Under the pieces are notes generated by a model. That model was not told where the DNA came from, ran no database searches, and was given only the letters and a program-made list of their open reading frames with translations. Made by a program: the position numbers and the translations under genes. From Eutreptiella sp. 'Long Island Sound 2002' (taxonomy: Eukaryota > Protista > Euglenida), in assembly GCA_964036045.1 (NCBI GenBank), contig OZ038378.1:108810001-108874000 (forward strand): a stretch of DNA of 64,000 nt, given 5' to 3'. Shown piece by piece: positions 20,101-63,460 of this stretch (positions within the stretch are counted from its first letter, which is position 1; each line of letters starts with the position of its first letter).

Positions 20101-20911
20101 GATGTTGTATTGTGTATTGTTTGCAACCTTGCACACCCCTAACCTGCTACCCCTGACCCAAACCCTGACCATTTGCATTGGTCCCTCTGAAAAGCCCCCT
20201 GCGGACTAGGCAGATTCCCCATCCCCCATCCGACAAGTCCATCTCTGCCCGGCACCTGACCCCGCATGCAAAACACCTTGCCTGCCTGAGGCAGGCTGTT
20301 ACAATCCGGATTCTATTGTGACTATTTTGTCGTCTGGTTTGTACCTGTGGAGAAATGTATGTGCGGCACAGGAAAGGAGGTGTAGTCTCTGTTCCTGCTG
20401 GGGAGGTTTCAGTTCTGCCAGCCAACCCACTGGTTTATCTCCCACACCCGTTCCAGTTTATGGCGGTGGCGCTTACATTACAGGTGTGCCAATCTGCCCA
20501 CCACCCCCTTTTTTGCAATCCCTACACTTAATGGAAATCTCCGTAGTTTTTACGGCACTTTGCGCACCCGCACGCCCCACGTCTGCGGCTCTACGCGTGC
20601 ACACAGTGCACCCCAAGTTAGGAGTTATCCCTAAGGCACCTCTCTGTCGCTTGGCGTCATGTCAGGCCTGAGACTGTCCTGCAGGACTTGTGTCTGGATG
20701 ACGATGCTTTTGTGTGCGCAGTACCCCATGCGCGTCACACCCGCTCTGGAAGCTGATCCACCGCCAAACAGTGCTCTGGAAGCTGATCCACTGCCAAACA
20801 GTTCCTTGTCGAAGTGGTGTACGAAGGAGCGTTTGAGAAATGTGCACCGCAACAGGCAATGGGCGCAACACCCACATATCAGACAGGTTTGTTGAACCCA
20901 ATACCTCAGGT

Positions 20912-21910
20912 TCACATGGGCATAACTTCGGTTCGATATGTCCCAGAGCTCCACAACAGTAGCTGTGCCAAATGCCACGGCCCTGTAGGCAACGCGGCAG
21001 CGGCTGGGGTATAGCTGTTGCCAAAGGTCTCCAAATACCAGGTTCTGGTGGCGCGTGCGCGCTGCAGCAGGTTGGCAATTACGAACAGCAGCAGCAGCGC
21101 AGCGTTTGTGTCCGTCTTGAGAGCAGCGATGCACCCATACACAACGATTTCAAAGAAGTAATGAGGGCAGGCCATGTGCTCAAAAGCCCGGCCGGTGGGG
21201 ACCCGGTAGTGCCGCTCTTCACTGTGCAGGTTCATGCCGTGGGGTCTGATGGCAGCAAGGGACATGTGACATTCTACCTGCCGGACACTGGCCACGGCAA
21301 AGAGCAGCAAGACTCCCAGCAGCACGGCCCAGTGCGGAGGCTCAGGGGAGACGGTCAGGGAGAGGTCCACGTGCGCAATGGTGAGTGCGGCGGCCATGTA
21401 AAACGTGCAGCCCGAAAAGAAGTTGAAAGCCGTGACCCTCTCACACAGGCTCCAGCGGTGGACAGCGAGGGTCTCCCACAGGCGGACCAGGCAGTGCACG
21501 AGGAGTAGCAGCAGCGACATGGGGAAAGGCTGGGGGGCCATGCCCGGGTGGGGCTTTAGGACATAGGACTCCGCTACGTGGCCCCGCAGCCATTTGAAGG
21601 CATACATCACCAACAGATACCAGGGATTCGAGAAGAAGAAAGCGTTTGTGGGGGGGATGTTGAGGACATGGAAGCAGAGGCACATGAGACTGACCATGGC
21701 ACCCACCAAATAGAACATCATGAACCCATGTTTACGGGTGATGATGCCCGTGGAGGGCTCCTTCTTGTGCACCCCATACAATGTGACGTGGTCAAAGCGG
21801 TGGGAGCCCCACTTGGCCCCCAACAGCAGCAGTGCGACACCCCAGTAGACCGTGAGGATGAGGGGGAGACTGAAGACGAGCCCGTCCAGGCTCCACAAGA
21901 CCCCAAGCAT
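20912..21910 (-). CDS. SRD5A3: Polyprenol reductase (copy 4)
   Basis: Same ORF with GAA to GVA and SHPSY to SNPWY changes. Confidence 0.88.
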   Translation of the reverse strand: MLGVLWSLDGLVFSLPLILTVYWGVALLLLGAKWGSHRFDHVTLYGVHKKEPSTGIITRKHGFMMFYLVGAMVSLMCLCFHVLNIPPTNAFFFSNPWYLLVMYAFKWLRGHVAESYVLKPHPGMAPQPFPMSLLLLLVHCLVRLWETLAVHRWSLCERVTAFNFFSGCTFYMAAALTIAHVDLSLTVSPEPPHWAVLLGVLLLFAVASVRQVECHMSLAAIRPHGMNLHSEERHYRVPTGRAFEHMACPHYFFEIVVYGCIAALKTDTNAALLLLFVIANLLQRARATRTWYLETFGNSYTPAAAALPTGPWHLAQLLLWSSGTYRTEVMPM

Positions 21911-37055: not shown

Positions 37056-40000
37056 TTGCAAAACAGTAATATCAAAAAGGATGAGCTTTGTCTCATTCTT
37101 TTGGCTGAATCTGGAAATACACCCCTGTATATGCGTGTTCCTGGAAAAGAAGGAGCCAAAGCTCATGGTTTTGGCCAAGTTCCTCTTTGCACATCCCACT
37201 TATTGCCCTCGCAGCTGGCTGCTTCCAAGGTAGACGAGACGTGTCTCATTTGTCGTGACAATCCCTGAAAGGCTTCCAATACCAAGTTGCAGGGCTAGTA
37301 CACGGACTATATTCTTGGTCGGCCATGCACTATTGGCTATGCGTGGGCTTATGGACATCGGCATGGTATCTTTCTCCAACAATCTCGCGTTGGCATTGTC
37401 CATTTGCTTACTTACCTTTAGATCGGGCCCCTTTCTATACCGGTCCCCTGCTCAAGTATGGCTTGATGGTGACATTATGGATGCAACGCCGTTCGTTGCC
37501 TTCCTCACTGGCAACACATACAGGACTAAGGATGACTTTCTGGATGCCGTTAATCCTGGGGGTCACCCGGCCGAGTTTCTTTGTTTTGCTTTGTCACTTC
37601 GTTTAAACAAAGATACCCGCCCTACACTAAAGACGTTTCTTCGGCAACTTAAGTTGCTGCGCAGCGTCAAGCGCACCGCTAGGTGGTTCGGTCTAGCAGC
37701 TTAGGAGGTACATAATTTGTACCGTGTGATGTTGGTGCGTTGTCGTCCTTGTGTTGACTTGTTTCGTCACGACAAGGAAATTGCTCCCACTCGGAGCGTT
37801 GGATGCAAGCTGGCACACTTTGTTTTATGTGCTCCACGTGCACCTTCCAACCATCTCGCGTTGGCATTGTCCATTTGCTTACTTACCTTTAGATCGGGCC
37901 CCTTTCTGTACCGGTCTCCTGCTCAAGTATGGCTTGATGGTGACATTATGGATGCAACGCCGTTCGTTGCCTTCCTCACTGGCAACACATACGGGACTAA
38001 GGATGACCTTCTGGATGCCGTCCATCCTGGGGGTCACCCGGCCGAGTTGCTTTGTTTTGCTTTGTCACTTCGTTTAAACAAAGATACCCGCCCTACACCA
38101 AAGACGTTTCTTCGGCAACTTAAGTTGCTGCGCAGCGTCAAGCGCACCGCTAGGTGGTTTGGTCTAGCAGCTTAGGAGGCACATAATTTGTACCGTGTGA
38201 TGTTGTTGCGTTGTCGTCCTTGTGTTGACTTGTTTCGTCACGACAAGGAAATTGCTCCCACTCGGAGCGTTGGACGCAAGCTGGTACATTTTGTTTTATG
38301 TGCTCCACGTGCACCTTCCAACAATCTCGCGTTGGCATTGTCCATTTGCTTACTTACCTTTAGATCGTGCCCCTTTCTATACCGGTCTCCTGCTCAAGTA
38401 TGGCTTGATGGTGACATTATGGATGCAACGCCGTTCGTTGCCTTCCTGACTGGCAACACATACGGGACTAAGGATGACCTTCTGGATGCCGTCCATCCTG
38501 GGGGTCACCCGGCCGAGTTGCTTTGTTTTGCTTTGTCACTTCGTTTAAACAAAGATACCCGCCCTACACTAAAGATGTTTCTTCGGCAACTTAGGTCGCT
38601 GCGCAGCGTCAAGCGCACCGCTTGGTGGTTTGGTCTAGCAGCTTAGGAGGCACATAATTTGTACCGTGTGATGTTGTTGCGTTGTCGTCCTTGTGTTGAC
38701 TTGTTTCGTCACGACAAGGAAATTGCTCCCACTCGGAGCGTTGGACGCAAGCTGGCACACTTTGTTTTATGTGCTCCACGTGCACCTTCTCGTGCAACTA
38801 GGGCACACGACTGTGCCGCAGCTTTGTGGGCGGTATGGAAGGCACTGAAATTTGTTTTATGGTTTGATACCTTCTATCGTCACCGTTTCCACCCCACCCC
38901 ACATGAGTCAAACACATCACTTCACTGTACGGCAATTGTTGTAGCTCTTGGTCGCAAGGCAATTGAGTTTTTGTGGGGTTTTCCATCCCTTCCCACACTA
39001 CAAGCTTCTACTGCCCAGGCGGGCAAGTTGTTTACTACCACGCAGTCGGTCTTCATGTCAGCACCGTCTGACCTTATGGAAGACGACATACCCCCCCTAT
39101 ACATCTGTTGTCCGTTGGATGTTCGACCAATGGCTGTGCAGAGCACCCAATGGCATCCGATCATGCTTTCGGAACTTCAGTCATGAACGCAGTTAGATTC
39201 GCTTGGAGTGGTATTAGCTGTGTCTGAAATACGGGACCACACTTCTTGTGTGCTCCCAATACTCATCCATAAAAAGATACACTACAATATCATGAAGACG
39301 ATATATAGGGCCTCATACCGTGCGTACAATGTGTGTCACAAGCTTTTTGGAACCCCCGTGGTGTACGGCATATGGCACCCACATAAGTACACGGTTGCTG
39401 TCACATATCGCCTCTTTTTCCCATTGATGGTGGCATTTAGTCATGGTACTGGCAGCCGATATCTTGGTGTATGCATTCTTCAAGTTGATCTTCCTGAAGC
39501 TTATGCTCCCATGTTTGTTTGTGTCTACCTCCCAGTAGAAGATACGGATACAGCAGAAGCTGGGGTTGCTATGTGGTTGGTGCCTTCCCCGAATGTGGGC
39601 ATCCTCGAATGCCGGTCGGCTACTAGGTCAGGCACACACTGTGTATAGTATTCTCTTTGAATGTACACCAGCACTATTCCTCATCGAGTACTTGGTTCAC
39701 GAGTGTGGCTGGTGTGCCTATTCCGGACAGGTTGCTCACAAGGTGTTCAGGTATTCCCATGTGGTGGTGACATATCCGCTGTATGAGTTTCATTACAACG
39801 TTCAGTACCTGAGGACACTAGGAAATGCTATGATGGTATCGGACAAAAGGCATGACGACTTAACTGGGCAATGTCACGTTGAGGAAAATTGTGAGGCATT
39901 GTTGGCAAGGCTTGTTGCTAGCATGCGCGCCAATCCCCAATGCAAATCGTTGGACACCGCATGTGATTTGTTTTTCCTTGAAAGCTGCAAAATTGCATGA

Positions 40001-45844: not shown

Positions 45845-48771
45845 AAGCAGGGGAGCGCGCGGCCCAAGATGTGGGCACGGTCGTTCCCGGAGGTGTGCTG
45901 CGAGGGGCGCCGTTGGCCGTCTGCTCCACGTGCTGCACTGCTCCCCCGTGTTGCATTGTTGCGGCGGACATTTTCGGCCACACTCACTGCAGCGGCGCAA
46001 GCAGAAGGGACACAAGGTGAACTCCCTCCTCCCGGGGATTGTGAGCAGCAAGGAGCTGCACGGCGGCTTCCGGCTAGGCAGGATCCGGGTCCCTCCCTCC
46101 GAGAACAGGGGCAGTGAGGGTGCTGCACGGCAGAATGCGGGACAGCAGCGTGCTGCAAGGCGGGCTGTGCTACAGGCTCACGGGCAGACAAAGGCTGCTG
46201 CTCTGTGTGAGGGATGTCACGGAGAGGGCCAGGGTCAGGGACAGGGTGGTCACCCGTTCCCCCATGCGCGGCGCAACCCCCCCCCCCCCTACCATGGGTA
46301 GGCGGGGCAAGCAGAGGTGCGCCAGGCTTGCGCGCCCCCTTCACTGCCTCCTACCCTCACCCCCGCGTGGGAGGTGCCCATTGGGCGGGGAGGCTGTGGC
46401 CAGAATTGTGTATAGCGACCTAGTCGGCTATCAGACATCAGACATGAACCTTTTATGGACCGCCATCACCCAACCATGAACCCCCCTCCCCCAAACCCCT
46501 TGATTATGCACTTCATCAAACCCCACCCCCTCTCCCTAGCCGCTCTCCACATCAAAGTTCTTCACTGGAAAAAGCCCCCCCCGGGTGGCCGACCCATCCC
46601 TGCCCCCACCAGCGGCTGCTTTCAAGCTGCCCCCCCCACCAAGGAAAAAAGGTGTCACGGGAAACACAACCCCCCCCCCCCCCTCCGTTAGAAAAAAATT
46701 GCAAATTCCTGCATCTCACATTTGTTGTCGACAGCAGTGTATGTGACAACTTCAATTTGATTATGCAATACACCCTCGAAGTGTTTCGGTCGTTTGTGCT
46801 GACAATTTGCCTATGCAGAACGCCCCTGAGGTGTTTTCATTGTTTGCGGTCTAGGCCTTGGCGCCTATGACCGTAGACCCATTCAATGATGAACATGTTG
46901 ACAACGGCTGAGAAGGGGTTCTGACATGTTTGCTTCTCCAACCCATTGAAATTTGTTTACTGTGAGCCCCTTCAATGACGATACATGAAAGTTGCTCCGT
47001 CACGCGTGGGTCTGTGTGTGGACCTCTGCGGGGACCTTTTGCTTAGGCCCTGATCTGTGCGGACCGAGCTTTTGAAAACAGAAAAGACTTCGCGGCCGAG
47101 GAAAGGGACATGCGCTGCGATGCTGCCACTAGCAGTCAGTCTACGATGTCCGACCGAATGCGCACCATGTCCTCAAATGGCCAGCAAGCATTTTCAAAAC
47201 CCTTGTTTGTCAATGTCATGTGCAAGCAACATACGTCTGAGAAGGGGCTTTGCAGTGAATTTGAACTTGATTTGCTTCTTTAAACACAACCCTCTTACCT
47301 AGCCCTCAAGGCTCATTGCAATGTGCTGCACTTTGCTCTACTCACGCTCTGTTGTTCATTCCCAGGATGTGGTGACGACCATAAAAAACCCCCTGTCCTC
47401 TTCGTGTTACGTCTTGCCGTGCTTTGCCTTGTGCTATTTCTCCAGGAAGTATGGAAAATCATGCAGAGGAAACCATAGTGTAGGGAAAACACCCCCCCCT
47501 CCCCGTGCGCAATCGTATGAAAAAGCCTGCCTTGACTCTTTCAATGCAATGTGTCACATGGTGTGTTCAAAGAATGTATGTGTGTATGCGTTGTTTGATG
47601 TTCTTTGGCTTACCATGACCATTGTACTTATGGATCCGAATTTAATTGATACCAATTGCAATGGTCATAATGCTGTCCCTTGAGGTAGCAGGACCCGCCT
47701 GCAGTCTCAGCTGTGACGCTGTGACTACAGGTGATGTGTAGGTCATATGCACCCTCCCATTTGCCATTGTTTGCATTTTTTCCTGTTTGCAACCCCTTCG
47801 GTGATGATCTCATTCATTTCAGTACCCTGTGGGGTTGGTCTGCCGATGTTGGGTTTGTGCTGTGCCACAAACCCCTGCAGGGACCTTTTTCTTAGGCCCT
47901 GTTTCGTGTCGGCAAAGCGGTTGAGAAATGCACCGTTTTGTGCATTGGGAAGCGCCCCTTGTGGATTCTTCAACACATGGATGCACAGCACAGCATGCAG
48001 ACATTCAGCCCTTGTGCGCGCTGAGAAGGCCTGGTCCACTGGTCCACCGGCGTGCCATGCCATCAGCAAGCAGACAAGTACACTCTCCACCGCGGCCTTT
48101 GAGTGCCTTAGAGTGGCAGCCCCAAAATTCCACGTGCACCCACCGCGTGTTCCTAAGGGCTCCCCCACACGGTGTATCCGGCCTTCATATCCAAAAACAA
48201 GACATCTGAGAAGGGGCTCTGCTATGTGTCACGTTTGCTTCACAATTGAACACACTTTGTTGTATGGTGCCTTCTGCTTCGCTTTCATGTTGCTGTCCAC
48301 GTCCGTCTTCACGCAATCGGAAACAGATTGGAAAACGCCCCCCCCCCTCCCCATTCTGCAACCACATCTAAGAGCCTGCCCCCCCCCCGTTTGACAATAG
48401 CAAGGCGCATTCATCTAGTGCTCCCATGGTCCAACATGCCCCCTGGCCAATCCTCCATGCTCCTCTATACTTGACAATTTTTGTATGCCCACTACAACCT
48501 CCGAGTTGTAGTTTTTGCTACGTGGCCTCAACCTTAGCGTTGTAGTCCACTAAGCCGCTCTCCAACCGCTCTCTTCCCTTGCTCCTCAACCGCTCGCTTC
48601 CACTTATCACAAAACTTCCAAACCATGGCTCCAAAATGGGTCCCCAAGAGCAAGTATGGAGGTCCAAAGCCAAAGCCCAAGCCAAAGCCACAGGCAACGC
48701 CCCAGCAACCACCCGGGGATGCGGATTTCGTTATGGTCCCACCGCAACCATCTACACAACCACCACCACTG

Positions 48772-49350
48772 CGTGCCCTTGAGCCGCAGAAGTCTACCCC
48801 TGTCCCGGCCGTGGCGCCCGTCGACTCGGGCGCGCCACAGGGTGCCCAACGCGTTGCCCAGCGAATGCGTGCCCCTGAGCCGCAGCGGTCCGCCCCTGTC
48901 CCAGCCATGGCGCCGGACGACTCGGGCGCGCCAAAGGGTGCTCACCCCTTGGCCGAGCGAATGCGTGCACCTGCGCTACAACAGTCCGCCCCTGTGCCGA
49001 CCGTGGCGCCGGTTGACTCGGGCGCGCCACAGAGTGCTTAACCCTCTGCACAACCAATGCGTGCCCCTGAGCCGCATCAGTCCGATCATGTCCCGGCCGT
49101 GGCGCCGGTCGACTCGGGCACACCACAAGGTGCTCAACCCTCATCACAGCCACCGGGTGCCCTTGAGCGACAGCAGTCCATCACTTTCAAGGCAGTGCCG
49201 ACTGCTGCCTCGGGTGCGCCACAAGGCGGTCAACCCTCAACACAACCATTGTGTGCCGCTGAGCTACATCAGTCCACCCCTGTCCCGGCCATGGCGCCGG
49301 TCGATTCGGGTGCGCCACACGGTGCTCAACCCTCATCACAACCACCATGT
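48772..49350 (+). repeat. Coding minisatellite, ~6 x 96 bp (32-aa unit, e.g. MRAPEPQRSAPVPAMAPDDSGAPKGAHPLAER)
   Basis: atgcgtgc(c/a)cctg recurs at 48865, 48961 and 49057; PVPAVAPVDSGAP recurs in frame. Confidence 0.9.
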
Positions 49351-50878
49351 GCCGCTCCGCCACAGCCATCCCCCCAACTCCCACCGCGGCCAACACTGTT
49401 GCCCACTTCTGCCACATTGAACAACATGGACTATGGGCCCGATGACAACCTCGTGGAAGGGTTTACACAACGGTGGCTTCACCGCGACACGTTTGTGGCC
49501 AAAGCATCGGAGGTGTACACTTTCCATGAGATGGAGGCTGCTGAGGCGTGGGCAAACAAAAATGGCACGGAACGGAAGCTGGTGTTTGAGGAATGGTACC
49601 CCGAAGATGACGGCAATGGGGATGGGAATGTTCCCCAACAGCCACAATGGGCCTCCCAAATGGAGGTCTGGGGGAACAATGAGCTTAGTGATGGTGACAT
49701 GGTGCATGGCTAGATCGCTGCCAACCGCAACTGGGACCCCTCGAAACCAAACTTTCAGGCAAGGGTGCATGGTGATGGAATCTCAAGAGACTGGGTTTGG
49801 ATCAGCCGTGCTAATAAGCCACGCGCCAATGTCACTAGCATCTACTATTGTAAGGTTGTCCCTGACACAGCTGCCTTTCGCACCTTGCGTAGGGAGATCC
49901 AGCAAGGGTTACCATGGCCCAAAGCTGCTGGCAAACATCCACGCCGAACCAAGGGTCGCGCCTCCCTTGTCGAACAAGGACCGGGAGATCCTTAAACACC
50001 TTGTCCAATGCCACGCGCTGAACCCTTCAAAGGAGTTGGCCGTGCGTCAGGTACTGGACGAGTCATTCATCACAGCATTGATTGGAGGTGCTGGCACAGG
50101 GAAGTCGGAGACCTCGGTGGCATGCATCAAAGCCGTGCTATGGCAGCAAGGCCTCCTTGTCGCCCAGAACCGCGATCCTGCTAACCTGGGCACAGTCAAT
50201 ATAGGCAAGCAGGTGGGGGGACCTGTGGGAGATACTCCATGTGTGCTGATGACTGCACCCACCAATGCACACGTCCACAACTTGTTGACACGCGTGCATG
50301 AGGAGTGTCATAACGAAACTGTGTTTCGTGACAGGGTGCTCGGCGACCATCCAGCACCCTGGTTGCGACTCCGTGCCCAACGGGCTACTGCCCCACCAGG
50401 GCTGGCGTCCTTTGACCCGCTGAAGGTGCAGGCCACCTTGGGGAACACCCCAGGTTGTAAGGCTACCCTCAAATGTGACCTTAACTCCTGTCGTGTGCTG
50501 TTTGCCACGGCTGGGATGGTTGCTAACCGGCACAAGCTGCTGCTTGGGGCTGCAGCAGGGAAGCAACAAACCAGGTTTGCGTTTAGCTTTGCGGATGAGG
50601 CGTCCAGGCAGAGCATCCCAGTGGGCTTGGACTTGGCAACCATGGGCAGCCAACGTCCGTTTTGTGGTGATGTTGGGCAGTTGCGGCCCTGCAGCCATGT
50701 CCAGCTTTTGGCAAGTGCTTGTGAGGGTGAAGTAAACGCCAAAGCAGTGGCATGTCCATCGGATCATACCTTCAAATACAACAATGTTCAGAGGCAATCT
50801 CCCAGCCCTCAAGTGCATTGGCATGATTCGCACCGGTTTTGCACCACCAGCACCTTGCGATTCTTTTTGATTTTAGCA

Positions 50879-51245
50879 TAGTGTGTCGTCACTACCGCTA
50901 CCGACTGTGCTGCGTAGGTGCCCCTCCTAACAGCAAGCTCCAAAAAATGGCACACCAGCACACCCTCCTTCATGCTCAGGTTCCCCTGTTTAAGCAACAC
51001 ATGATCCATTCTCAAGTTGTTCCATGCGTCCTCCACATCACTGTACATTCCACCCAGGTCCTCTGGCCCCAAAGTTTCCTCCAACTCCCCCCACCAGGTG
51101 GTCCCATCGAGGTCCCAATGCGGATGGGGTTGTTCAGGATTGGGTCAAGGAGGGGGTGCACAGATGAGTGGTAGTAACCTCAGCCCCCCCCTGTGAACAA
51201 GGCACGCATAATTGTAGCCAGCGGCTTGGTCATCCGCTACTGTTG
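50879..51245 (-). other. 367-bp inversion inside the helicase gene
   Basis: The minus strand encodes QQ*RMTKPLATIMRALF...KEGVLVCHFLELAVRRGTYAAQSVAVVTTHY, the segment expected between motifs III and V. Flanked by GCA (50876-50878) and TGC (51246-51248). Confidence 0.85.
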
Positions 51246-52779
51246 TGCCAGGATACCGGCGCGGCAACACGTGCGGTGGTGTGACTCGACTATTACGTGA
51301 GGTTTGTTGGTTGCAGGGGGCAAGCCAATCCGGTCAACCTTTTGAAAACGGTTGCTACCCTCGATCGGTTCCAAGGGCTGCAAGCCCCAGCCATCTTGGC
51401 CTCCCTAGTGTCTGCCACACCAGGGATCATGCATAACATCTAGAGGTCAAACACCCTGACCAGCAGGGCGCAATCGGAGCTGCACCTGTTCGGGCGATTT
51501 GCACTGGAAGAACCACCCCACCCGCAGTGTATGGATGGCTGCATTGCACGCTGTGCAGTGGGAAGCAGGCTCTGCGACTGTGAGCGACACCCTTGAGCTG
51601 GCTCTGAGGGAGGGTCGTTGAAAAGGTCATGCATGGCACAATCTACCGGTTGGCCGGGGGGTGGTGGGGCACTGGCTGTGGAAGCCATGGAAGAGGCACA
51701 ATAGGGGACGTGACCCATGGGGGTATTCACCAGGCAGTGGTGATCGGTTGCTTGACTTTGAGCACATCATGGCCAAAACTACGAAGGATGAGGTGGCGGT
51801 TCGTGTGAAGGATCCCATGAGGAACGTTGTGAAACCGCACCTTTTTGGGGTCATCCTCCTTGCCTTCACCAAGTGGGCGCTGCCCTGCCACCTTGTTGAG
51901 GACGATGGACAGTTTGTTGGGGACTGCGGGGGACTGGTGAGGGTAACCCACAGAACTCACCTCAAACCGTGGGAGCAGAGACTCCTCCAACACTTGGCGG
52001 GAAAGCCCCTCTTCCACAAGCAGAAGTACCAACTTAAGGACAAAGTAGGGACGTACCGCAGGATCGACTTGCCCTTGTGCAGGGTGCGTACGGCTGCCTG
52101 GATATGGTGCGGCTCTCGCGTGGGGACTTCTATACCCCTCTTGGGTTGTACGTGGCATCCCTGCTCCGGGGGTTAACCGTTGCCATGAGAGCCTTGGGGT
52201 GTGTGCACCAGTGCAGGTGCATCGGGAGGAAGCCGTCCAATGTGTTCCCAATGGTGGTGAGTGGTAGTGTTGTGACGTGTCGTGGATGGTCAGAGGCCCT
52301 AGGCCAATGCATGTTCTTGTAGAAAAACCTTTAGGCAACATGCAGGCCTGGCGCCAGGGCCAATACTGCATGGAAACCATGCTGCCTCAGAGGGTGAGCT
52401 TAGATGCGCCCCAGAATGTAACCCTTCACCCTATGGGGCAGCTTGCACCCCTCGGGTACACACATGTGACCAGAGCCATGTGATCGCCACCATCTTTGCT
52501 GTTTTTGTGCCTTGACTACCTTTGTGTGCAATGGGATATGCTGGGTTGCAAGGTACGAGTGTGTGACAAGCGGCAAGCCACGGCATGTATAAGAGACATA
52601 ACATGGATCAATACAGCACATGCCCATGGCTGCACTTTGGACGCAATGGATCTGACGACCGCAAGATGCACATCCTCATGGCCACGCCATGTACATGGCT
52701 GCCAGAAGATTTAGGGAACGCTCCAGAGTCTTCAGAAAAAGTGGTGGAGGGGTGGCTAGAGGAGAAGGGTGAAAACACG

Positions 52780-54988
52780 CCAATTATTATGGGGGTCTAG
52801 ACCCCCCTAGGAATTGACGCATGGGCATGCGTCAATTATTTAGGGTGTCTACACCCCTCAAACAATTGACGCATGGGTATGCGTCAATTATTTAGGAGGT
52901 CTACACCCCCCAACTAATTGACGCATGGGCATGCGTCAATTTTTTCGGGGGTCTAGACTCGCCTAGGAATTGAATTGACGCATGGGTATGCGTCAATTAT
53001 TTGTGGGGTCTGGACCCCACTAGGAATTGACGCACCGGTATGCGTCAATTTTTCAGGGGGTTTACACCCGCCCTAGGAATTGACGCATGGATATGCATCA
53101 CTTATTTGGGGGGTCTAGACCCCCCTAGGAATTGACACATGGGTATGCGTCAATTTTCAGGGGGTCTGCACCCCCCCTAGGAGTTGACGCATGGGTATGC
53201 GTCAATTATTTTGGGTGTCTACAACCCCCTAGGAACTGACGTATGGGTATGCGTCAATTATTTTGGGGATCTAGACCCCCCTAGGAATTGACGCTTGGGT
53301 ATTCGTCAATTATTTTGGGGGTCTAGACCCCCCTAGGAATTGACGCATGGGTATGCGTCAATTATTTTGGGGGTCTAGACCCCCCTAGGAATTGACGCAT
53401 GGGTATGCGTCAATTATTTCGGGGGGCTACGACCCTCAAATGATTCACGCATGGGTAGGCGTCAACTGTTTGGAGGGTGTAGACCCCCCAGATAGTTGAC
53501 GCATGGGTATGCGTCAATTATTTCGGGGGTCTAGACCCCCCTAGGAATTGACGCATGGGTATGCGTCAATTATTCAGGGGATCAGAACCCCCAAATAATT
53601 GACGCATGGGTATGCGTCAATCATTTGAGGGGTCTAGACCCCCCTAGGAGTTGACGCATGGGCATGCGTCAATTATTTAGGGGGTCTGAACCCTTGAAAT
53701 AATTGACGCATGGGTATGCGTCAATTATTTGAGGGCTCTAGAACCCCCTAGGAATTGACGCATGGGTATGCATTGATTATTTAGGGGGTCTGAACCCGTG
53801 AAATAATTGACGCATGGGTATCCGTCAATTATCTTGGGGGTCTACACCTCCCAAATAATTGACGCAGGGGCACGCTTCAATTATTTTGGGTGTCTAGACC
53901 GCCCTACGAATTGTTGCATGGGAATGCGTCAATTATTGCGGGGGGCTACGACACTCAAATGATTCACGCATGGGTAGGCGTCAATTGTTTGGGCGGTGTA
54001 GACCCCCCCAAAAGTTGACGCATGGGTATGCCTCAATTATTTGGGGGGTCTAGACCCCCCTAGGAATTGACGCATGGGTATGCATCAATTATTTAGGGGG
54101 TCAGAACCCCCAAATAATTGACGCATGGGTATGCGTCAATCATTTGAGGGGTCTAGACCCCCCTAGGAATTGACGCATGGGTATGCATCAATTATTTAGG
54201 GGGTCCGAACCCTTGAAATAATTGACGCATGGGTATGCGTCAATTTTTTGAGGGGTCTAGACCCCCCTAGGAATTGACGCATGGGTATGCATCGATTATC
54301 TAGGGGGTCTGAACCCCTGAAACAATTGACGCATGGGTATCCGTCAATTATCTTGGGGGTCTACACCTCCCAAATAATTGACGCAGGGGCATGCGTCAAT
54401 TATTTTGGGGGTCTAGACCACCCTAGGAATTGTTGCATGAGTTTGTGTCAATTATTTCAGGGGGCTACGATCCTCAAATGATTCACGCATGGGTAGGCGT
54501 CAATTGTTTGGGGGGTCTAAACCCCCCAACTAATTGACGCATGGGCATGCGTCAATTATTTGGGGGGTCTAGACCCCCTAGGAATTGACGCATGGGTATG
54601 TGTCAATTATCTCGGGGGGCTACATTCGCAAAATAATTCACGCATGGGTAGGCGTCAATTGTTCGGGGGGTGTAGACCCCCCGAATAATTGACGCATGGG
54701 TATGCGTCAATTATTCGGGGGCTCTAGACCCCCCTAGGAATTGACGCACGGGTATGCATCGATTATTTAGGGGGTCTGAACCCCTGAAACAATTGACGCA
54801 TGGGTATGCGTCAATTATCTTGGGGGTCTACACCTCCCAAATAATTGACGCAGGGGCATGCGTCAATTATTTTGGGGGTCTAGACCACCCTAGGAATTGT
54901 TGCATGAGTTTTTGTCAATTATTTCAGGGGGCTACGATCCTCAAATGATTCACGCATGGGTAGGCGTCAATTGTTTGGGGGGTCTAAA
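52780..54988. repeat. 52-bp double-palindrome satellite, left block (~42 monomers)
   Basis: Consensus ctagacccccctaggaattgacgcatgggtatgcgtcaattattttgggggt; period 52 (53321/53373). Confidence 0.97.
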
Positions 54989-57300
54989 GGTAGGTAGGTA
55001 GGTATCTTCGGGAGCTCGGGATGCCTCCTTTGACATTGCAGGAAGAAGGTCTTACCAAGGGGACGTCCTGTCCCTCCCACTGCCCTATGTCAGGTGCCTC
55101 TTGAGCCGCTCCCGCATGTGCTTGGGAAGGCATTGTCGCGGCCACCCGGTCCATGTGTCCCGGGTGGGAGGGTGTCCCCACATGTGTCCATGGGTAGGGC
55201 CACATGCCCCCTCCTTTGGGTGGCAGCTCTGGGGGGCTGCCCAGCCGTGTGGAGTATCTCTCACCACAAGGGGTATTGCTCCCGCTTGTCTACGGTACGA
55301 CCGCCTCACCCTTGTGGCTTGAGTTGCGGGGCCACTCTGCTTGGCAGGTGACCCCCTCCTGGACTGTGTACCGGCTCGCCTGTCACCGGTTGCTTCCATG
55401 GCTCCGGGTGACGTTTGCCATGGTCCCCGATGCAGCCTGGCCGGGCTCGGACCAGTGGCCTTGGAGTACCGCTCCTGCCACTGGCCCGGTGGGTCGGCTG
55501 GGTCGCCCCAGTGCGTCCGACCCATGGGGTATTGGTTCTTTCCTGTCCCTCGGGCGCCCTACGTGTGTGCAGTGTCCTGGGCCGCTGGGCTCCTGTTCAC
55601 CGGTGTGCCCGCGCGGTTTGCTGTGGTGCGTCTGCGGTGTGCTGGGCCAGCTGGCTCCTGTTCACCGGTGTGCTCGCTCAGTGTGTTGTGTTGCATGTGC
55701 GGTGTCCTGGGCCACTGGGCTCCTGTTCACCGGTGTGCGTGCTGTGTGCGGTGCGCGTGTGCCATGGGTGGTTGTGTCCCTCTTCCTCCCCCCCTAATTT
55801 TCGTTTTTTTTTGTTTTTTTTTCTTGTTTTTTTTTACTTGTTTTTTTCTTTTTTTGGGAAAAAAAAGGAAAAAACAAAAAAGAGAAAAACAGGGGCGCGC
55901 GTACACTGCAGGCACAGGCACGGGCACCTGGTGCGGCAGTGCAATAGCGTTGTGTCCTCTGGCGTGTGTCGTCGGTGCTGTGGCGGCGGTCGCGCCCCAG
56001 GGGTGCGGCTCGCGTGTCCTGATGTACACGGGTATGGGTCAGGGTGGGTTTGGTTAGGTGTCTCTTTGCGTCTGGCGCTGGCTGGTTAGGCGGCTGTGTG
56101 GGCTGTGGCTGTGGGCTGTGTCTACGTATTTCCCTCAGCGGGCCTGGTTTGGAGTCAAGGGTTGACGGTTTGGGGGTGTGGCTCGGGTTTGATTTGTGTT
56201 GGGGCTTCGGCTCAGTTAGGCTTGGGTCAGGGTGGGTTTGGTGAGGTGTCTCTTTGCTTCTGGAGCTGGCTGGTTAGGCGGCTGTCTGGGCTGTGGGTGT
56301 GGGCTGTGGTTTCGGTGTTCCCTCGGCGGGCTTGGTTAGGAGTCAAGGGTTAGCGGTTTTGGGGTGTGGCTCGGGTTTGATTTGTGCTTGGGTTCTGGCT
56401 CGGTTAGGCGGTTGCGCGGGGCCGGGCGTGTGGGTAGCGGCGTCCACGGGGTCGTGCGCCCGAGGCGAGTGCGGGGTGGTGCGTGCGGGCCGGCCGGTGG
56501 CCGGTGGCCTCACTGGGAGTCCCACACGGAGGGGTCGACGGGCGTGCCGGGGGCGTACGCAGCGTGCAGGTTGGGCAGCAGCGGGCGCACGTGCAGGGCG
56601 TCGGCGTGCCCGATGAGGACCTCACTGGGGACCGAGGGGTTGGCGGCAAGCAGTATGCGATGCCCGGGAGGGGTGGCGGCGAGGAGCGGGAGGATGTCCG
56701 CGGCCCGCGACGTGGGGGCGAACACGACGTGGGCCGGGTGCGGCCCCGGGAGCGGTGCCGGGGGGAGCGGGATCACAGGACGGCGGTCTACTGTGAGGTG
56801 CCAAGTGGCGCGATGGTGGAGGAGCCGGACTAGGGCGATGTTGTGGCGCAGTGTGTGGGGTTGGGTGCTGGGCGGCGTGGGGACGTGCGACGGGAGGGGG
56901 GGGGGGGGCGGGGCGGTGGCGTGGGAGGGGGCACGGCGGAGGAGTGGCGCCAGCGACGTGTGTGTCGTGCTGAGGGTGGAGAGGAGCCCACGGTAGCGGG
57001 CCTGGGTTCGGCGTCTTTGGGCTTAGTGGTGCTCGTTGTCGTGTGTGTTGGCTTCCTTCGGCGTCCGGTTCGTTTGGTGACTTCTGGGCGGGGCGTGGCG
57101 TGGCGCCCCGTGGTGGTGGTTTGCTGGGTAACGGGGTTAGATGGCGGCGCCGCTGGCCGGGGGGTCAGGCGCGTCGTGTTGTGTGGCGCGCAGGGCTCCT
57201 CGGGTGCTGTGGGTGTCGCCGGTGTCGGTGCGCCGACGCTTGTGGGGTGGTGAGGGGGTGTGTGCGTGCGGGGCTGGGCTTTGGGTGATGTCCCACAGGC
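54989..57300 (-). mobile_element. 2.3-kb insertion in the satellite; putative 5'-truncated retroposon (non-LTR-like)
   Basis: (TACC)4 tail on the minus strand at 54989-55004; 95-bp flanking duplication (54894-54988 = 57301-57395, one mismatch); GC-rich open frame ~57030-56510; internal 188-bp and ~66-bp tandem repeats. No RT motif seen. Confidence 0.6.
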
Positions 57301-59728
57301 GAATTGTTGCATGAGTTTGTGTCAATTATTTCAGGGGGCTACGATCCTCAAATGATTCACGCATGGGTAGGCGTCAATTGTTTGGGGGGTCTAAACCCCC
57401 CAACTAATTGACGCATGGGCATGCGTCAATTATTTGGGGGGTCTAGACCCCCTAGGAATTGACGCATGGGTATGTGTCAATTATCTCGGGGGGCTACATT
57501 CGCAAAATAATTCACGCATGGGTAGGCGTCGATTGTTCGGGGGGTGTAGACCCCCCGAATAAGTGACGCATGGGTATGCGTCAATTATTCGGGGGCTCTA
57601 GACCCCCCTAGGAATTGACGCACGGGTATGCATCGATTATTTAGGGGGTCTGAACCCCTGAAACAATTGACGCATGGGTATCCGTCAATTATCTTGGGGG
57701 TCTACACCTCCCAAATAATTGACGCAGGGGCATGCGTCAATTATTTTGGGGGTCTAGACCACCCCAGGAATTGTTGCATGAGTTTGTGTCAATTATTTCA
57801 GGGGGCTACGATCCTCAAATGATTCACGCATGGGTAGGCGTCAATTGTTTGGGGGGTCTAAACCCCCCAACTAATTGACGCATGGGCATGCGTCAATTAT
57901 TTGGGGGGTCTAGACCCCCTAGGAATTGACGCATGGGTATGTGTCAATTGTCTCGGGGGGCTACATTCGCAAAATAATTCACGCATGGGTAGGCGTCAAT
58001 TGTTCGGGGGGTGTAGACCCCCCGAATAATTGACGCATGGGTATGCGTCAATTATTCGGGGGCTCTAGACCCCCTAGGAATTGACGCACCGGTATGCATC
58101 AAGTATTTAGGGGGTCTACATCCCTAAAATAATTGACGCATGGGTATCCGTCAACTATTTGGGGGGTCTAGACCCCCCTAGGAATTGACGAATGGGTATG
58201 CGTCAATTATTTCGGGGGGCTACAACCCCCAAATAATTCACGCATGGGTAGGCGTCAATTGTCTGAGGGGTGTAGACCCCCCGAATAATTGACGCATGGG
58301 TATGCGTCAATTATTCGGGGGGTCTACACCCGTGAAATAATTGACGCATGGGTATCCGCCAATTATCTTGGGGGTCTACACAACCCAAATAATTATCTTC
58401 GGGGTGTAGACCCCCCTAGGACTTGTTGCAAGGGTATGCCTCAATTATTTGGGGGGTCTAGACCCCCCCTAGGAATTCATGCATGCTTATGAGTCAATTA
58501 TTTAGGGGTCCTACATCCCCCTAGGAATTGACGCTGCGGTATGTGTCAATTATTTAGGGGCTCGACACCCCCCTAGGAAATGACGCATGGGTATGCGGCA
58601 ATTATTTTGGGGGTCTAGACCCCCCTAGGAATTGACGCATGGGTATGCTTCAATTATTTTGGGGGGCTACACCCCCCAAATAATTCACGCATGGGTAGGC
58701 GTCAATTGTTTGCGGGGTGCAGACCCCGCGAAAAATAGACGCATGGGTATGCGTCAATTATTTGGGGGTTCTAGACCCCCAAATAATTGACGCATGGGTA
58801 TGCGTCAATTATTTGGGGGGTCTACACCCCTAAAATAATTGACGCATGGTTATCCGTCAATTATCTCGGGGCCTACACCCCCCAAATATTTGACACAGGG
58901 GCAGGCGTCAATTATTTTGCGGGTCTAGACCCCCCTAGAATTGACGCATGGGTAGGTGTCAATTATTTGGGGGGTCTAGACCCCCTGGGGTTTCATGCAT
59001 GCTTCTGCGTCAATTATTTAGGGGTCCTAATCCCCCCCTAGGAATTGACGCATGGGTATGCCTCAATTACTTAGGGGCTCTACACCCCCCAAATGGTTGA
59101 CACATGGGTATGCGTCAATTATTTTGGGGGTTCTAGACCCCCAAATAATTGACGCATGGGTATGCGTCAATTATTTGGGCGGTCTACACCCCTAAAATGA
59201 TTGACGCATGGTTATCCGTCATCTATATCGGGGCCTACACCCCCCAAATATTTGACGCGGGGGCATGCGTCAATTATTTTGGGGGTCTGGACCCCCTAGG
59301 ATTGACACATGGGTAGGGGTCAATTATTTGGGGGGTCTAGACCCCCCTGGGGTTTCATGCATGCTTCTGCGTCAATTATTTAGGGGTCCTACATCCCCCT
59401 AGGAATTGACGCATGGGTATGCCTCAATTACTTAGGGGCTCTACACCCCCCAAATAATTGACACATGGGTATGCGTCAATTTTTTTGGGGGTCTAGATCG
59501 CCCTAGCAATTGACACATGGGTATGCGTCAATTATTTGGGGGGTCTAGACCCCCAAATAATTGACGCATGGGTATGCGTCAATTATTTTTGGTGTCTACA
59601 CCCCCCTAGGAATTGACGCATGGGTATGCGTCAATTACTCCGGGGGTCTAGACCCCCCAACTAATTGACGCATGGGTATGCGTCAATTATTTAGGGCGTC
59701 TAGACCCCCCTAGGAATTGACGAATGGG
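57301..59728. repeat. 52-bp double-palindrome satellite, right block (~47 monomers)
   Basis: Same monomer as the left block; 467-bp higher-order repeat (57301/57768) and a 363-bp repeat (58771/59134). Confidence 0.97.
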
Positions 59729-61125
59729 CACGTGGGGACTGGAACCATCGCGTGGCCAACTTGCAGTGAATCGGGCCGCGTGGACAAGTGTGGCACGTCA
59801 GTCCCCCTTCTGTGGTTTCATCCATGCGATGTCTCCTTGTAGTTTGTTTTGCCTTACTACACCCTTTGAGGTGTACATTCGTGTTCTGTCGCCGCAACCT
59901 TGCTATTGTTGGCATCAGAAGCCAATTCACCCGCCTACAATAATGTGTGCCTTTTAGCCACAGCAGTTAGTTTTGGTCCAAGCCCTTGCGCTTCGCGACC
60001 AAACCTTGTCCTAACCGCTGCGAGCCACTAAGCCGCAGCACTTCGTTTGTGGTCATAGCCATAGCGCTCTTGACACAAACACACCCACAACGGCGTCTCG
60101 TGGACCAGCTGGTGAACCTAAGGAGAAGCCAAGCTCGAACTTTGAGTACCAAGGACCTGCGCTTGATTGCCCAGCGGAGTTGTGGGAGCCCCATAGTGGT
60201 CACGGTTGTGGACCTTGCAAGGCACGAAGGCCACCCAAACCGCTAACAGTTGTGGTGCACGAGCCCAGCAATGGACCAGCCTCCTGAGTGGCCACCGGAG
60301 CACTTACCGGAGCCCGCAAGAAAGAAGTATGGACTTTTGCTGGCCACAAGACAATTAAGATGAGAATCCACCCCTGAGGTGGCAGGACAGCTATGGACAC
60401 CGTTGAGGGCCCGCATGGCATCATGTGACCTTGAAGTGATGAATCACCATGGTGCCAGGCCATTGTGCCGGTTCGTGTACACCGAGCATGGGTTTGCCAT
60501 GCCCACCATGCATGATGGGGGCAGCCACGTGCACTACCGGCACGTTGGTGGTGTAACCAACTCCCTGGCATGTATTGCAGCGCAAGGACATGGAACACCA
60601 GACCGCATGCCCCAGGTCTGCCACACCGGTGAGTCACCTTGCATTGCATCGAGAGTGGACCCTACAGGGGTTCTCACGCCACAGTCCACTGCCACCCCTG
60701 CACTGGTGAACGATGCATGTTTGACACCGGCAGCTAGTGATGGAGGGGTGGCGAGTTCCTTGGAGGAGTCCCCTATACCACTTGCAGAGAAACCCATGGA
60801 GCCGGTTGCTGTGGACTATAGTCGTGGTAGGACAGGCACTGTGGCAACAGTGAAGGCATGCAGTCAGTCTAGTGCTGATTTTGTCACCACCCTAGTTGAA
60901 TACCCGAGGTCATTGGAGCAGAGCCCGGTGAGCAAGAAGTGACCACGGATTACACCCCGGAGTAATGGAGCTCCCCTGAAATATGCCCAGAAAGAGCAAG
61001 GCAGAAAGACAGTTCCGATAGATCCAGATGATACTCCATTGGACAAGGTGGATAAGAGGCCCAGCAAGGCCAAGGAAGGCAAAGACCTGCCAACCGTCAG
61101 GTCCTTGAAACTACACATTTTACGA

Positions 61126-61715: not shown

Positions 61716-62222
61716 GTGGGCGGTATGAAGGGCCACACCAATGCAAGAGACACTCGTCTAGTGCAACAAACGCGCAACTACAAGGCATTGGCGACCTTGG
61801 TGAACGGAATTGCAAGGGAGATGTTGCCTGAATGGTTCACATGGACTACCATGCAATTGTCTTGCAATGTCCTCACAAAACCACATTCGCATGTGCATGA
61901 CACGTTCCCTTGGTCGGCAGTGTTTTCCACAGTACAACACACACGGGAACAATTATGGGTGGAGGTGGGTGGTGTATGTAATGCTCTGGGTGGACGGAGA
62001 TGTAGTATGCAGTGCTTGGATGGTGTTACCTGGGATGGCGCCACGTACGATGTATCCCAACAACCGGTTCTGGTACGTATGGGTGCATGGCATGGCACTT
62101 GTTGTTGGCACGGTGAGAGGAGGTTGGTGGTGTTATACTCCCGTGGTGACTGGCGAACACTCCCGCCATGCGATCGTGCATTCCTCAATGAGGCTGCATT
62201 CCGCTTACATGCAGGTGCGTAG
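61716..62222 (+). pseudogene. 2OG-Fe(II) dioxygenase-like domain
   Basis: FTWTTMQLSCNVLTKPHSH (HxD with D to H), LWVE..G, WHGTCCWHGERRLVVLY (distal His plus 2OG-binding Arg). Confidence 0.7.
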
Positions 62223-62229
62223 TGGGCTA

Positions 62230-63060
62230 CTTGGCGGAGCACCGCAGCGACCATGGGGAACGGAAATTCCATATGGCTACAACTGGTGTTGGCTGGGTAC
62301 CACGCTGCAGCGCCTCCTTGTGGCGGTCCGGTGGACATGGAGGACAACACCAAGATCGCCTTGATGAGGGGGGTGTCTGGGGGACATTGTGGCAGGAAAT
62401 TGTGGCACATGTGGGAGGCGGTGCGTACAATCCGCAGGACATTGCTGAAAGGTTTGCCCTGAAGGGTGCCATGGATGGGACGGTGTGCTGATTCAGCGGG
62501 CGGTGCAAGTGCAAAGCCTTTGCACCAAAATTCCAATGGATGCGGCAGGCAGAGATGGCGGAATGTTGGAAGTACATGGTGCCCAAGCTCACGGTCGCTG
62601 GGGTGGTCGATTTGTCATGTTGTCCGTCCTCCGAGCAGTTCTGGCAACGGTGTGGTGAGTGTAGGGTAAAGTTTCTATGGGAGGGGGGGGGGACAGGCAT
62701 GCCAGCACAGGTACTGCATGTGACGAATCAAGGGCCGTGTGTACGACAGCGCATGAAGGAGGGAATGAAGGGGCAACCTGTTGGCGTACCTGTTACCCCC
62801 CCCCTTGTGCGTGTGGGGGTGACCTGCGAGAGGCACCAATGTATGCATCTTTGGTGTTCAATGAAGTCGTGGGGTTACATGTCCACAACCAACAAGAGTA
62901 CAAGTTGGTTGTGGACCATGAATTTCTCGATGTCTTGCGATGGCAATGGTCCTTGCATGCCATGGTGGTGCACGTTGGATCAACGAAGGAGGAGGGTCAC
63001 TTTGTGGTGTATGTCGTTTTTAACGACAAGCGGTGGCTATGTGATGACACCACAGTAAAG
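62230..63060 (+). pseudogene. Ubiquitin-specific protease (USP/C19)-like domain
   Basis: Degenerate Cys box GNGNSIWLQLVL, FQWMRQAEMAECW (QxDxxE-like), His box VVHVGSTKEEGHFVVYV...WLCDDTTV. Confidence 0.72.
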
Positions 63061-63200
63061 GCCATGAGCCCACCCCCCCATCCACGAAAAGCAACTTTTC
63101 TGTTGCACAAGCGCAAACAAACCGATCTGATTGTACCAGACATGCCGCAGTCTGCCTCCCAACGGACAGGGGCTTCAGCCCTTGGCAAGACACGGGATGC

Positions 63201-63460
63201 CCAGAGCACACCTATTGACACCTCGGTGCGAGCCATGGCGCTGGCACCAGGTGCCCCCCCCCCCCCCCCCCCTCCTGCAACACAGGGTGCATCAAGGGTT
63301 GGGGACACAAACAGGACTATGCAGGCCCACAGCAAGCCTATTGACTCCTTTGTGCACAGCCATGGCGCTGGCCCCCCCCCTCCCCAACTGCAACACAAAG
63401 TGCATCAAGGGTAGGGGACCGGAACATGAGTATGCATGCCAAGAGCACACCTGTTGACAT
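63201..63460 (+). repeat. ~120-bp tandem repeat (about 2.3 copies) within the polyprotein
   Basis: cct(a/g)ttgac...gccatggcgctgg...ctgcaacaca..gtgcatcaaggg recurs. Confidence 0.75.

What the first reader, a model, noticed from the sequence alone, without database searches (positions are those of the whole stretch)
52776..59732. A satellite array that behaves like a mobile insertion: CACG direct repeats and exact frame restoration
Seen: left junction GAA AAC ACG|ccaatt, right junction atggg|CACG TGG GGA. Deleting 52780-59732 gives ...EEKGENT-WGLEPSRGQLAVNR..., in frame with ORF 59724-59957. The ends CCAATT / CCCATT (reverse complement) are weakly inverted. Inference: the array arrived as a unit, either as a satellite-filled non-autonomous transposon with a 4-bp target duplication or by microhomology-mediated capture (the junction bases also resemble the monomer).
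Basis: partly seen in the sequence, partly recalled or inferred. Interest (0 to 1): 0.75.

Follow-up and report, generated by a model that had tools for sequence, protein, structure and literature searches.

The report
Satellite block inserted beside helicase pseudogene
A 7-kb block of 52-base tandem repeats (with a later 2.3-kb insert inside it) cleanly interrupts a non-coding-looking stretch of a eukaryotic genome; it most likely got there by break repair rather than as a transposon, which is a known way for satellite DNA to spread.

Summary
The sequence facts are right. CACG sits at 52776-52779 and 59729-59732, and removing 52780-59732 joins two open frames.

Their weight is modest:
- A 4-nt direct repeat arises by chance in 0.5-9% of trials, depending on how firmly the ends are fixed.
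- The frame match arises in 2-14% of trials.
- The "inverted ends" are not above chance.

The "polyprotein" is a broken UPF1/SEN1-like helicase pseudogene that ends about 480 bp before the junction. The flank ORFs show no sign of being coding.

The "array" is composite:
- About 89 monomers of 52 bp, each made of two palindromes, all in one orientation.
- A young, homogenised 9-monomer higher-order core.
- An unidentified 2.3-kb block inside that core.

The array ends abruptly, in nearly the same monomer phase at both ends. Both ends lie inside the same palindrome.

One distant paralogue (P0105/P0107) matches the left flank right up to the junction. It then continues without satellite, weakly matching the right flank (p about 0.03). 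The flanks were therefore probably once contiguous.

My best reading is capture of pre-formed satellite DNA by end joining with 2+2 nt of microhomology, followed by growth in place. A transposon with a 4-bp duplication is not supported but not excluded.

No DNA of other copies or other arrays could be obtained, so the decisive test remains undone.

The parts
52776..52779 (+). Left copy of the 4-nt direct repeat CACG (last bases of the left flank)
   Evidence: Read directly. When locked to the monomer phase it aligns to positions 17-20 (TGCG), and only CG matches.
52780..54988 (+). Left satellite sub-array: about 42 monomers of 52 bp. It begins inside the 3' arm of palindrome P1 (..CCAATT).
   Evidence: Tandem repeat finder reports period 52 with 42.4 copies. 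Monomer list. Consensus and phase.
54894..54988 (+). 95-bp stretch repeated on the far side of the inner block (copy 1)
   Evidence: 94 of 95 bases identical to 57301-57395.
54989..57300 (.). Inner non-satellite block of 2312 bp. It is GC-rich and G-skewed, starts with (GGTA)n, and has internal 65-bp and 188-bp repeats and a T-run/A-run at 55798-55890. I read it as a secondary insertion into the array.
   Evidence: Sequence; repeats; no similarity elsewhere in the window; no Pfam or PDB match for its ORFs.
57301..57395 (+). 95-bp stretch repeated (copy 2)
57301..59728 (+). Right satellite sub-array: about 46 monomers in the same orientation as the left one. It ends after the 5' arm plus loop of P1 (AATTGACGAATGGG).
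54324..58079 (+). Homogenised core of the array: 9-monomer (467-bp) higher-order units whose monomers are 98-100% alike on both sides of the inner block. The outer monomers are only 84-96% like their best partner.
   Evidence: Monomer identity matrix. Higher-order unit 54428 versus 57302 is 463 of 467 identical.
59729..59732 (+). Right copy of CACG
   Evidence: Read directly. It aligns to monomer positions 15-18 (T/CATG), matching at 2-3 of 4.
52570..52779 (+). Left flank open frame (70 codons). This stretch is conserved in a distant paralogue and is probably not coding.
   Evidence: Translation. No Pfam match. Search of 1.84 billion representatives found only itself plus P0105 (52% identity, E 1.5e-6). 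P0105/P0107 align to 52636-52776.
59733..59957 (+). Right flank open frame (74 codons plus stop). No relatives found and no coding signature.
   Evidence: Translation. Only itself found in the word search. GC at codon positions 1/2/3 is 0.53/0.56/0.48. Positions 59753-59778 are the best fit to the tail of P0105.
48600..52300 (+). Context: a degraded copy of a multi-copy UPF1/SEN1-like SF1 helicase gene, with frame shifts and an inverted segment at 50869-51278.
   Evidence: Pfam AAA_11/AAA_12. 73 related clusters. tblastn map onto the window. Nearest solved structures.

Best explanation
A piece of pre-existing 52-bp satellite DNA was joined into a chromosome break, about 480 bp downstream of a dead helicase gene. 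The joining was done by end joining and not by a transposase. The apparent 4-bp target duplication is two 2-nt microhomologies: target ..CA|CG.. against donor ends CG(C)CAATT.. and ..ATGGGCA. The donor was broken within about 8 nt of the centre of one hairpin-forming palindrome (P1). As a result the insert starts with part of the 3' arm of P1 and ends with its 5' arm plus loop, which makes it nearly a whole number of monomers. A looped-out circle cut once, or a linear piece cut twice at such palindromes, would both give this result. After arrival the array went on evolving in place. A 467-bp higher-order unit was amplified in its centre, and an unrelated 2.3-kb block landed in that young core.

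Shown here: the anatomy, the sharp ends, the phase of the ends, and the homogenised core.
Inferred: prior contiguity of the flanks (weak paralogue evidence), a donor elsewhere in the genome, and the repair pathway.
For: - The boundaries are sharp. 120 nt of each flank score 12-16 against the monomer, against a null mean of 13.1 and a 95th percentile of 16. Terminal monomers are no more decayed than inner ones.
- The ends are in phase. The array starts at monomer position 19-22 and ends at 14-18. Both lie inside P1.
- The monomer folds into two strong hairpins, with z = -11.6.
- The junction bases overlap the monomer by 2 nt on each side.
- The paralogue P0105/P0107 matches the left flank up to 52773-52776. 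Its 11-codon tail fits 59753-59778 (p = 0.028 and 0.03). The tail does not fit the satellite (scores 9-13 against a null mean of 13.6). This leaves no room for a 48-nt seed monomer in the paralogue.
- Growth in place is shown by higher-order units 99% alike that straddle the inner block.
- Spread of satellite arrays to new loci with junction microhomology and through circular DNA is documented in Drosophila (PMC7403614) and Tribolium (PMC11610590).
Against: - No true empty site and no second array could be examined, so it is not shown that this satellite exists elsewhere in the genome.
- The paralogue is only about 52% identical. It does not read N-T-W (AACACGTGG) at the junction, and its tail match is only p about 0.03.
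- Two-nt microhomologies are weak, and the same bases equally fit a real 4-bp duplication.
- Both ends falling within 8 nt of the P1 centre would happen by chance in roughly 10% of cases (my estimate).
- The ORF and CACG statistics were chosen after the fact.
Confidence: 0.4

Rival explanations
1. The block is a non-autonomous transposon filled with satellite, mobilised in trans, and it made a 4-bp target-site duplication (CACG) on insertion.
For: - An exact 4-nt direct repeat lies immediately outside the array. Its chance is 0.46% if the ends are taken as fixed.
- Removing the block plus one copy restores an open frame.
- Satellite arrays carried inside non-autonomous elements are known (review statement in PMC11610590).
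Against: - The terminal inverted repeats are not above chance: 6 of 12 matches, P = 0.067 against random array ends.
- The ends are ordinary monomer sequence with no distinct terminal module.
- No transposase, integrase or reverse transcriptase domain was found in the block.
- The CACG copies partly overlap monomer sequence.
- With +-1 to 2 nt of slack at the ends, the chance of a 4-mer rises to 3.5-8.9%.
- The ends do not fit a Helitron, LTR or foldback layout.
Confidence: 0.12
2. The array was born and grew in place. A local 52-bp stretch bounded by CACG microhomology was duplicated by slippage and then expanded by unequal exchange. Nothing arrived from elsewhere.
For: - The array is close to a whole number of monomers, with the same phase at both ends.
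- The period of 52 equals 48 + 4, as expected for a duplication primed on a 4-nt microhomology.
- There is clear ongoing expansion in place: higher-order units 99% alike and a homogenised centre with more divergent edges.
- No copy of the monomer was seen elsewhere in the 64-kb window or in any collection searched.
Against: - The two CACG copies align to monomer positions that are offset by 2 nt (17-20 against 15-18). They are therefore not one periodic element.
- The paralogue appears to go from left-flank to right-flank sequence with only one or two codons between, leaving no 48-nt seed.
- A seed made of two near-perfect palindromes is an unlikely chance occupant of a unique sequence.
- The collections searched do not hold this organism at all, since they also lack its helicase family. 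Their silence therefore says nothing about other arrays.
Confidence: 0.25
3. The flanks were never contiguous. The block marks a rearrangement breakpoint or an assembly join, and the ORF and the 4-mer are coincidences.
For: - Each coincidence alone is only at the 0.5-14% level and was chosen after the fact.
- The neighbourhood is rearranged: there is an inverted helicase segment at 50869-51278, and P0067 joins helicase sequence to the 61.7-kb ORF family.
Against: - Three separate indications point the same way. Fisher's combined p is 0.002-0.015. The paralogue tail test is the only one not chosen after the fact.
- Both sub-arrays share orientation and near-identical higher-order units, as expected of one array.
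Confidence: 0.06

Closest known systems
Spread of satellite arrays to new euchromatic loci by microhomology-mediated repair or circular-DNA reintegration (Drosophila Rsp-like/1.688, PMC7403614; Tribolium Cast satellites, PMC11610590)
   Same: - A short-monomer array sits abruptly in non-satellite DNA.
- The junctions fall inside truncated monomers, with a few bases of overlap with the target.
- The array later expanded locally and formed higher-order repeats.
   Different: - In Drosophila the junction microhomologies are 4-7 bp, and insertions go into existing arrays of another satellite. Here the overlap is 2+2 nt and the target is low-copy sequence.
- Presence on circular DNA and presence at many loci are shown for those satellites and are untested here.
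- The monomer here consists of two palindromes, and both ends fall in the same palindrome.
Satellite arrays carried as central repeats of non-autonomous transposons (Helitron/Helentron-, hAT- or foldback-type carriers; mentioned in PMC11610590, details from my own knowledge)
   Same: A tandem array is bounded by a short direct repeat and behaves as a discrete insertion.
   Different: - There is no terminal module distinct from the monomer.
- There is no TIR above chance.
- The ends are not 5'-TC...CTRR-3' and the insertion is not between A and T.
- All monomers are in direct, not inverted, orientation.
Tandem arrays born in place from microhomology-flanked duplications
   Same: Near-whole number of units, the same phase at both ends, a short direct repeat at the borders, and a homogenised centre.
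   Different: The border 4-mers are out of register by 2 nt, and a paralogue shows no seed unit.

Membership tests
Satellite DNA (tandem array with higher-order repeats) | Head-to-tail monomers of constant length in one orientation | tested here: met
   88 monomers spaced 50-53 bp apart, all with the asymmetric loop GGGT in the same sense.
Satellite DNA (tandem array with higher-order repeats) | Higher-order periodicity and local homogenisation | tested here: met
   9-, 10- and 7-monomer units. Core units are 99% alike.
Satellite DNA (tandem array with higher-order repeats) | Present at many loci or abundant in the genome | not testable with these tools
TIR DNA transposon with 4-bp target duplication (non-autonomous) | Terminal inverted repeats | tested here: not met
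   6 of 12 matches, P = 0.067 against random array ends. The resemblance comes from the palindromic monomer.
TIR DNA transposon with 4-bp target duplication (non-autonomous) | Target-site duplication of fixed length | tested here: inconclusive
   CACG is present on both sides. Chance is 0.46-8.9%. The bases partly overlap the monomer.
TIR DNA transposon with 4-bp target duplication (non-autonomous) | Several copies with the same ends at different sites | not testable with these tools
   No other array is available.
Helitron-borne satellite | 5'-TC ... CTRR-3' ends, insertion between A and T, no duplication | tested here: not met
   The ends read CCAATT... and ...AATGGG, and the flanks are ..CACG and CACGT...
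Helitron-borne satellite | Associated Rep/Pif1-type helicase | tested here: not met
   The neighbouring helicase is AAA_11/AAA_12 and UPF1/SEN1-like, with no Rep or PIF1 match. It is also a separate, degraded gene.
LTR retrotransposon (4-6 bp duplication) | Two direct terminal repeats with the same start and end (TG..CA), plus a primer-binding site and a polypurine tract | tested here: not met
   The two sub-arrays start and end at different monomers. The only shared piece is the 95 bp at the inner borders. No TG..CA ends, no purine tract before 57301, and no RT or integrase domain.
Foldback element | Long inverted terminal arrays of short repeats | tested here: not met
   Both sub-arrays are in direct orientation. 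Minus-strand matches arise only from the palindromes within each monomer.
Repair-mediated (end-joining or circular-DNA) satellite insertion | Junctions inside truncated monomers, with microhomology to the target | tested here: inconclusive
   Both ends are truncated monomers. The overlap is only 2 nt per side.
Repair-mediated (end-joining or circular-DNA) satellite insertion | Unoccupied homologous site | tested here: inconclusive
   Evidence is at the protein level only. P0105/P0107 match up to the junction, then continue without satellite and fit the right flank at p about 0.03.
Repair-mediated (end-joining or circular-DNA) satellite insertion | Satellite present on extrachromosomal circles | not testable with these tools
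   This needs wet-lab work or read data.

The most novel reading that the evidence does not exclude
The 52-bp double-hairpin repeat is a mobile satellite in its own right. Arrays would be cut at the tip of palindrome P1 and pasted at CACG-like sites with a 4-bp duplication by a trans-acting, structure-specific enzyme. That would be a non-autonomous element whose whole body is satellite and whose ends are half-palindromes.
Probability: 0.08. Interest if true: 0.75.

Novelty: new member of a known kind. Interest (0 to 1): 0.3.

Why it matters
If the reading holds, this is a clean single-locus example, in a poorly known eukaryote, of satellite DNA being seeded into unique sequence and then growing there. 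It adds the suggestion that a hairpin-forming palindrome in the monomer sets where the donor breaks. That idea could be tested genome-wide once the assembly is in hand. On present evidence this is an ordinary case of a known process, and it says nothing new about transposition.

Tried and rejected
Searches for DNA of other copies or other arrays all came back empty:
- The 22-mer of the monomer in viral, metagenome and genome contigs.
- The helicase protein or its alignment in the same three collections.
The contigs of P0002, P0067 and P0105 could therefore not be read.
- Self-BLAST and tblastx of both flanks and the inner block against the window found no paralogue.
- No solitary monomers lie outside the array.

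Other negative results:
- Rfam and tRNA scans found nothing.
- Pfam, NCBIfam and PDB gave nothing for the flank ORFs or the inner-block ORFs.
- A literature search for the monomer strings gave only irrelevant hits.

Protein searches of the flanks:
- The right piece found only itself.
- The word search of the left piece found only itself.
- P0104 and P0106 are repeat-boosted chance hits.

The joined, array-deleted ORF was not searched as one sequence because it has no reference. Its two pieces were searched apart.

Readings considered and rejected:
- LTR element, foldback element and Helitron (see membership rows).
- Degenerate monomers in the flanks.
- The CACG pair as simple periodicity of the array, because the two copies are 2 nt out of register.

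I did not take the contig for human. It looks like a protist or alga with tandem gene arrays and a multi-copy helicase family, but the organism could not be named.
Full report
**Observation.** CACG is at 52776-52779, followed by CCAATT. On the right..AATGGG is followed by CACG at 59729-59732 and then TGGGGA. The frame ending ..EEKGENT at 52779 is open for 70-71 codons. The frame starting WGLEPSRGQ at 59733 is open for 74 codons and is the frame of ORF 59724-59957. The removed segment is 6953 nt.

These features are only moderately unusual.
- A 4-nt direct repeat at two fixed points of this window occurs in 0.46% of trials. The figure rises to 3.5% and 8.9% if each end may move by 1 or 2 nt.
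- Two flanks open that far in one frame occur in 2.4% of random pairs. A joined ORF of at least 144 codons occurs in 14%.
- The "weakly inverted" ends match at 6 of 12 positions. Random array ends do as well in 6.7% of trials, because the monomer is palindromic.

**What the flanks are.** The gene to the left is not a polyprotein.
- ORF 49433-50881 has an AAA_11 domain.
- It belongs to a large family found on megabase ENA contigs: 73 clusters, some with up to 139 members.
- An intact member, P0094 (969 aa), has AAA_11 plus AAA_12. It resembles SEN1 and 5'-3' RNA-helicase-like proteins.
- Mapped on the window, the family covers 48.6-52.25 kb with frame shifts and with residues about 486-622 encoded on the opposite strand at 50869-51278. 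The window copy is therefore a broken pseudogene.
- The family's C-terminus falls near 52296. The junction at 52779 lies about 480 bp beyond it.

The two flank ORFs show no evidence of being coding.
- Neither has a Pfam match.
- The right piece has no relative but itself among 5.8 billion clusters within the length range searched.
- Its GC by codon position is flat at 0.53/0.56/0.48. A host gene in the window shows 0.58/0.43/0.76.
- "Frame restoration" is therefore not evidence of a disrupted gene.

**Anatomy of the block.** It is composite: satellite at 52780-54988, a 2312-bp non-satellite block at 54989-57300, and satellite at 57301-59728.
- The 52-bp monomer consists of two palindromes. P1 is AATTGACGCAT-GGGT-ATGCGTCAATT. 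P2 is GGGGGGTCTAGACCCCCC, or with C in place of the central G (TCTACA) in the consensus. Short spacers lie between them.
- As single strands the monomers fold into strong hairpins, with z = -11.6.
- All 88 monomers have the asymmetric P1 loop in the same sense, so the two sub-arrays are direct and not inverted.
- The centre (54324-58079) is made of 467-bp, 9-monomer units that are 98-100% alike on both sides of the inner block. Unit 54428 against unit 57302 is 463 of 467 identical.
- The outer parts carry older 10-monomer and 7-monomer patterns at 84-96%.
- The inner block is flanked by a 95-bp repeat, 54894-54988 and 57301-57395, identical at 94 of 95 positions.
- Because the higher-order units are so alike, that repeat may be either a long duplication made at insertion or the trace of a 372-bp loss.
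- The block has no similarity elsewhere in the window and no recognisable domain.

**Junctions.**
- The flanks do not decay into monomer-like sequence. Their scores are 12-16 against a null mean of 13.1 and a 95th percentile of 16.
- The terminal monomers are as good as the inner ones.
- When locked to the phase of the nearest monomer, the array begins at monomer position 19-22 and ends at 14-18.
- It is therefore a whole number of monomers to within a few bases. Both ends lie in P1: the left end starts with part of the 3' arm, and the right end finishes with the 5' arm plus loop.
- The left CACG lines up with TGCG (positions 17-20, with CG shared). The right CACG lines up with T/CATG (positions 15-18, with (C)A.G shared).
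- The two copies are 2 nt out of register, so they are not simply the periodicity of the array. Each shares about 2 nt with the donor sequence, as expected of end joining on microhomology.

**Empty-site evidence.** No DNA of other copies could be had.
- The monomer and the helicase are absent from the viral, metagenome and genome collections.

At the protein level I searched the two flank pieces separately, by reference. The joined sequence has no reference and was left out.
- The HMMER search of 1.84 billion representatives with the left piece found itself plus P0105 (64 aa, 52% identity, E 1.5e-6).
- P0105 and its near-twin P0107 sit on a 1.125-Mb ENA contig.
- They align to 52636-52776, which is up to within one codon of the junction.
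- They then continue LSPKLQQSG(R/S)S and stop.
- That tail does not resemble the satellite, scoring 9-13 against a null mean of 13.6.
- Among window sequences it fits the first 100 nt of the right flank best, at 59753-59778 (p = 0.028 by protein alignment and 0.03 by degenerate-codon alignment).
- This is weak but independent evidence that left-flank and right-flank sequence are contiguous in a paralogue, with no room for a seed monomer.
- The paralogue does not read N-T-W at the junction. At 52% identity, however, that does not refute the proposed AACACGTGG site.
- Combining the three indications gives p of 0.002-0.015. Two of the three were chosen after the fact.

**Mechanism.** I favour capture of pre-formed satellite DNA at a break by end joining, with confidence 0.4.
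- The donor would have been broken near the centre of a P1 palindrome. A looped-out circle cut once, or a linear piece cut twice, would both serve.
- The array then grew in place and received a secondary 2.3-kb insertion.
- Birth in place from a microhomology-bounded seed (0.25) explains the in-phase ends and the growth. It does not explain the out-of-register 4-mers or the seedless paralogue.
- A satellite-filled transposon with a 4-bp duplication (0.12) has only the 4-mer in its favour. There is no TIR above chance, no terminal module and no enzyme domain, and the layout does not fit a Helitron, LTR or foldback element.
- A breakpoint or an assembly join (0.06) is disfavoured by the concordant indications and by the unity of the two sub-arrays.

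**Comparison and verdict.** Spread of satellites into new loci with junction microhomology, through circular DNA or on transposons, is documented in Drosophila (PMC7403614) and Tribolium (PMC11610590).
- This locus looks like one more instance, with an undescribed double-palindrome monomer. No literature match was found for its sequence.
- It is a new member of a known kind, and interest is modest.
- The decisive step is to read the junction in the P0105/P0107 contig and to catalogue the ends of all arrays of this monomer in the source assembly.

Noticed in passing
window 54989-57300 (borders 54894-54988 and 57301-57395): An unidentified, GC-rich, G-skewed 2.3-kb block sits in the youngest part of the array. 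It starts with (GGTA)n, carries a T-run/A-run at 55798-55890, has 65-bp and 188-bp internal repeats, and is bracketed by a 95-bp repeat (94 of 95 identical). This could be a very long target duplication of a retroelement-like insertion, or an insertion accompanied by a 372-bp loss.
   Followed up: partly
window 50869-51278: In the helicase pseudogene, the segment encoding family residues about 486-622 lies on the opposite strand, so this is a roughly 410-bp inversion relative to intact family members. No inverted repeats mark its borders.
   Followed up: partly
window 61716-62222 and protein P0067: P0067 (310 aa, from another contig) joins helicase sequence (equivalent to 50357-50767) directly to a homologue of ORF 61716-62222. 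That ORF family and the helicase are therefore linked elsewhere, which hints at a larger repeated unit or at recurrent rearrangement. No Pfam domain was found.
   Followed up: partly
window 6404-21931: Four tandem copies of a unit of about 4.78 kb. Each holds a 338-339-aa minus-strand ORF with a steroid 5-alpha-reductase domain and a strong third-position GC bias. This is a tandem gene array.
   Followed up: no
window 37375-38789: Three copies of a 471-bp tandem repeat, 97% alike, each carrying an open frame of about 152 aa on the plus strand. No Pfam match for the adjoining ORF.
   Followed up: no
window 48761-49344: Six copies of a 96-bp repeat (76% alike) inside ORF 48656-49420, just upstream of the helicase domain. 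Some family proteins (for example P0076) align across this region, so it may be a coding repeat.
   Followed up: no
window 62677-63414: An ORF with a short match to the ubiquitin C-terminal hydrolase family (UCH, E 5e-6). It is followed by a proline-rich 126-bp imperfect repeat at 63199-63458.
   Followed up: no
window 33846-34625: An ORF with a sub-threshold RVT_3 (RNase H-like) match (E 0.006), in a GC-rich, G-skewed stretch at 30-36 kb. This may be a retroelement remnant.
   Followed up: no
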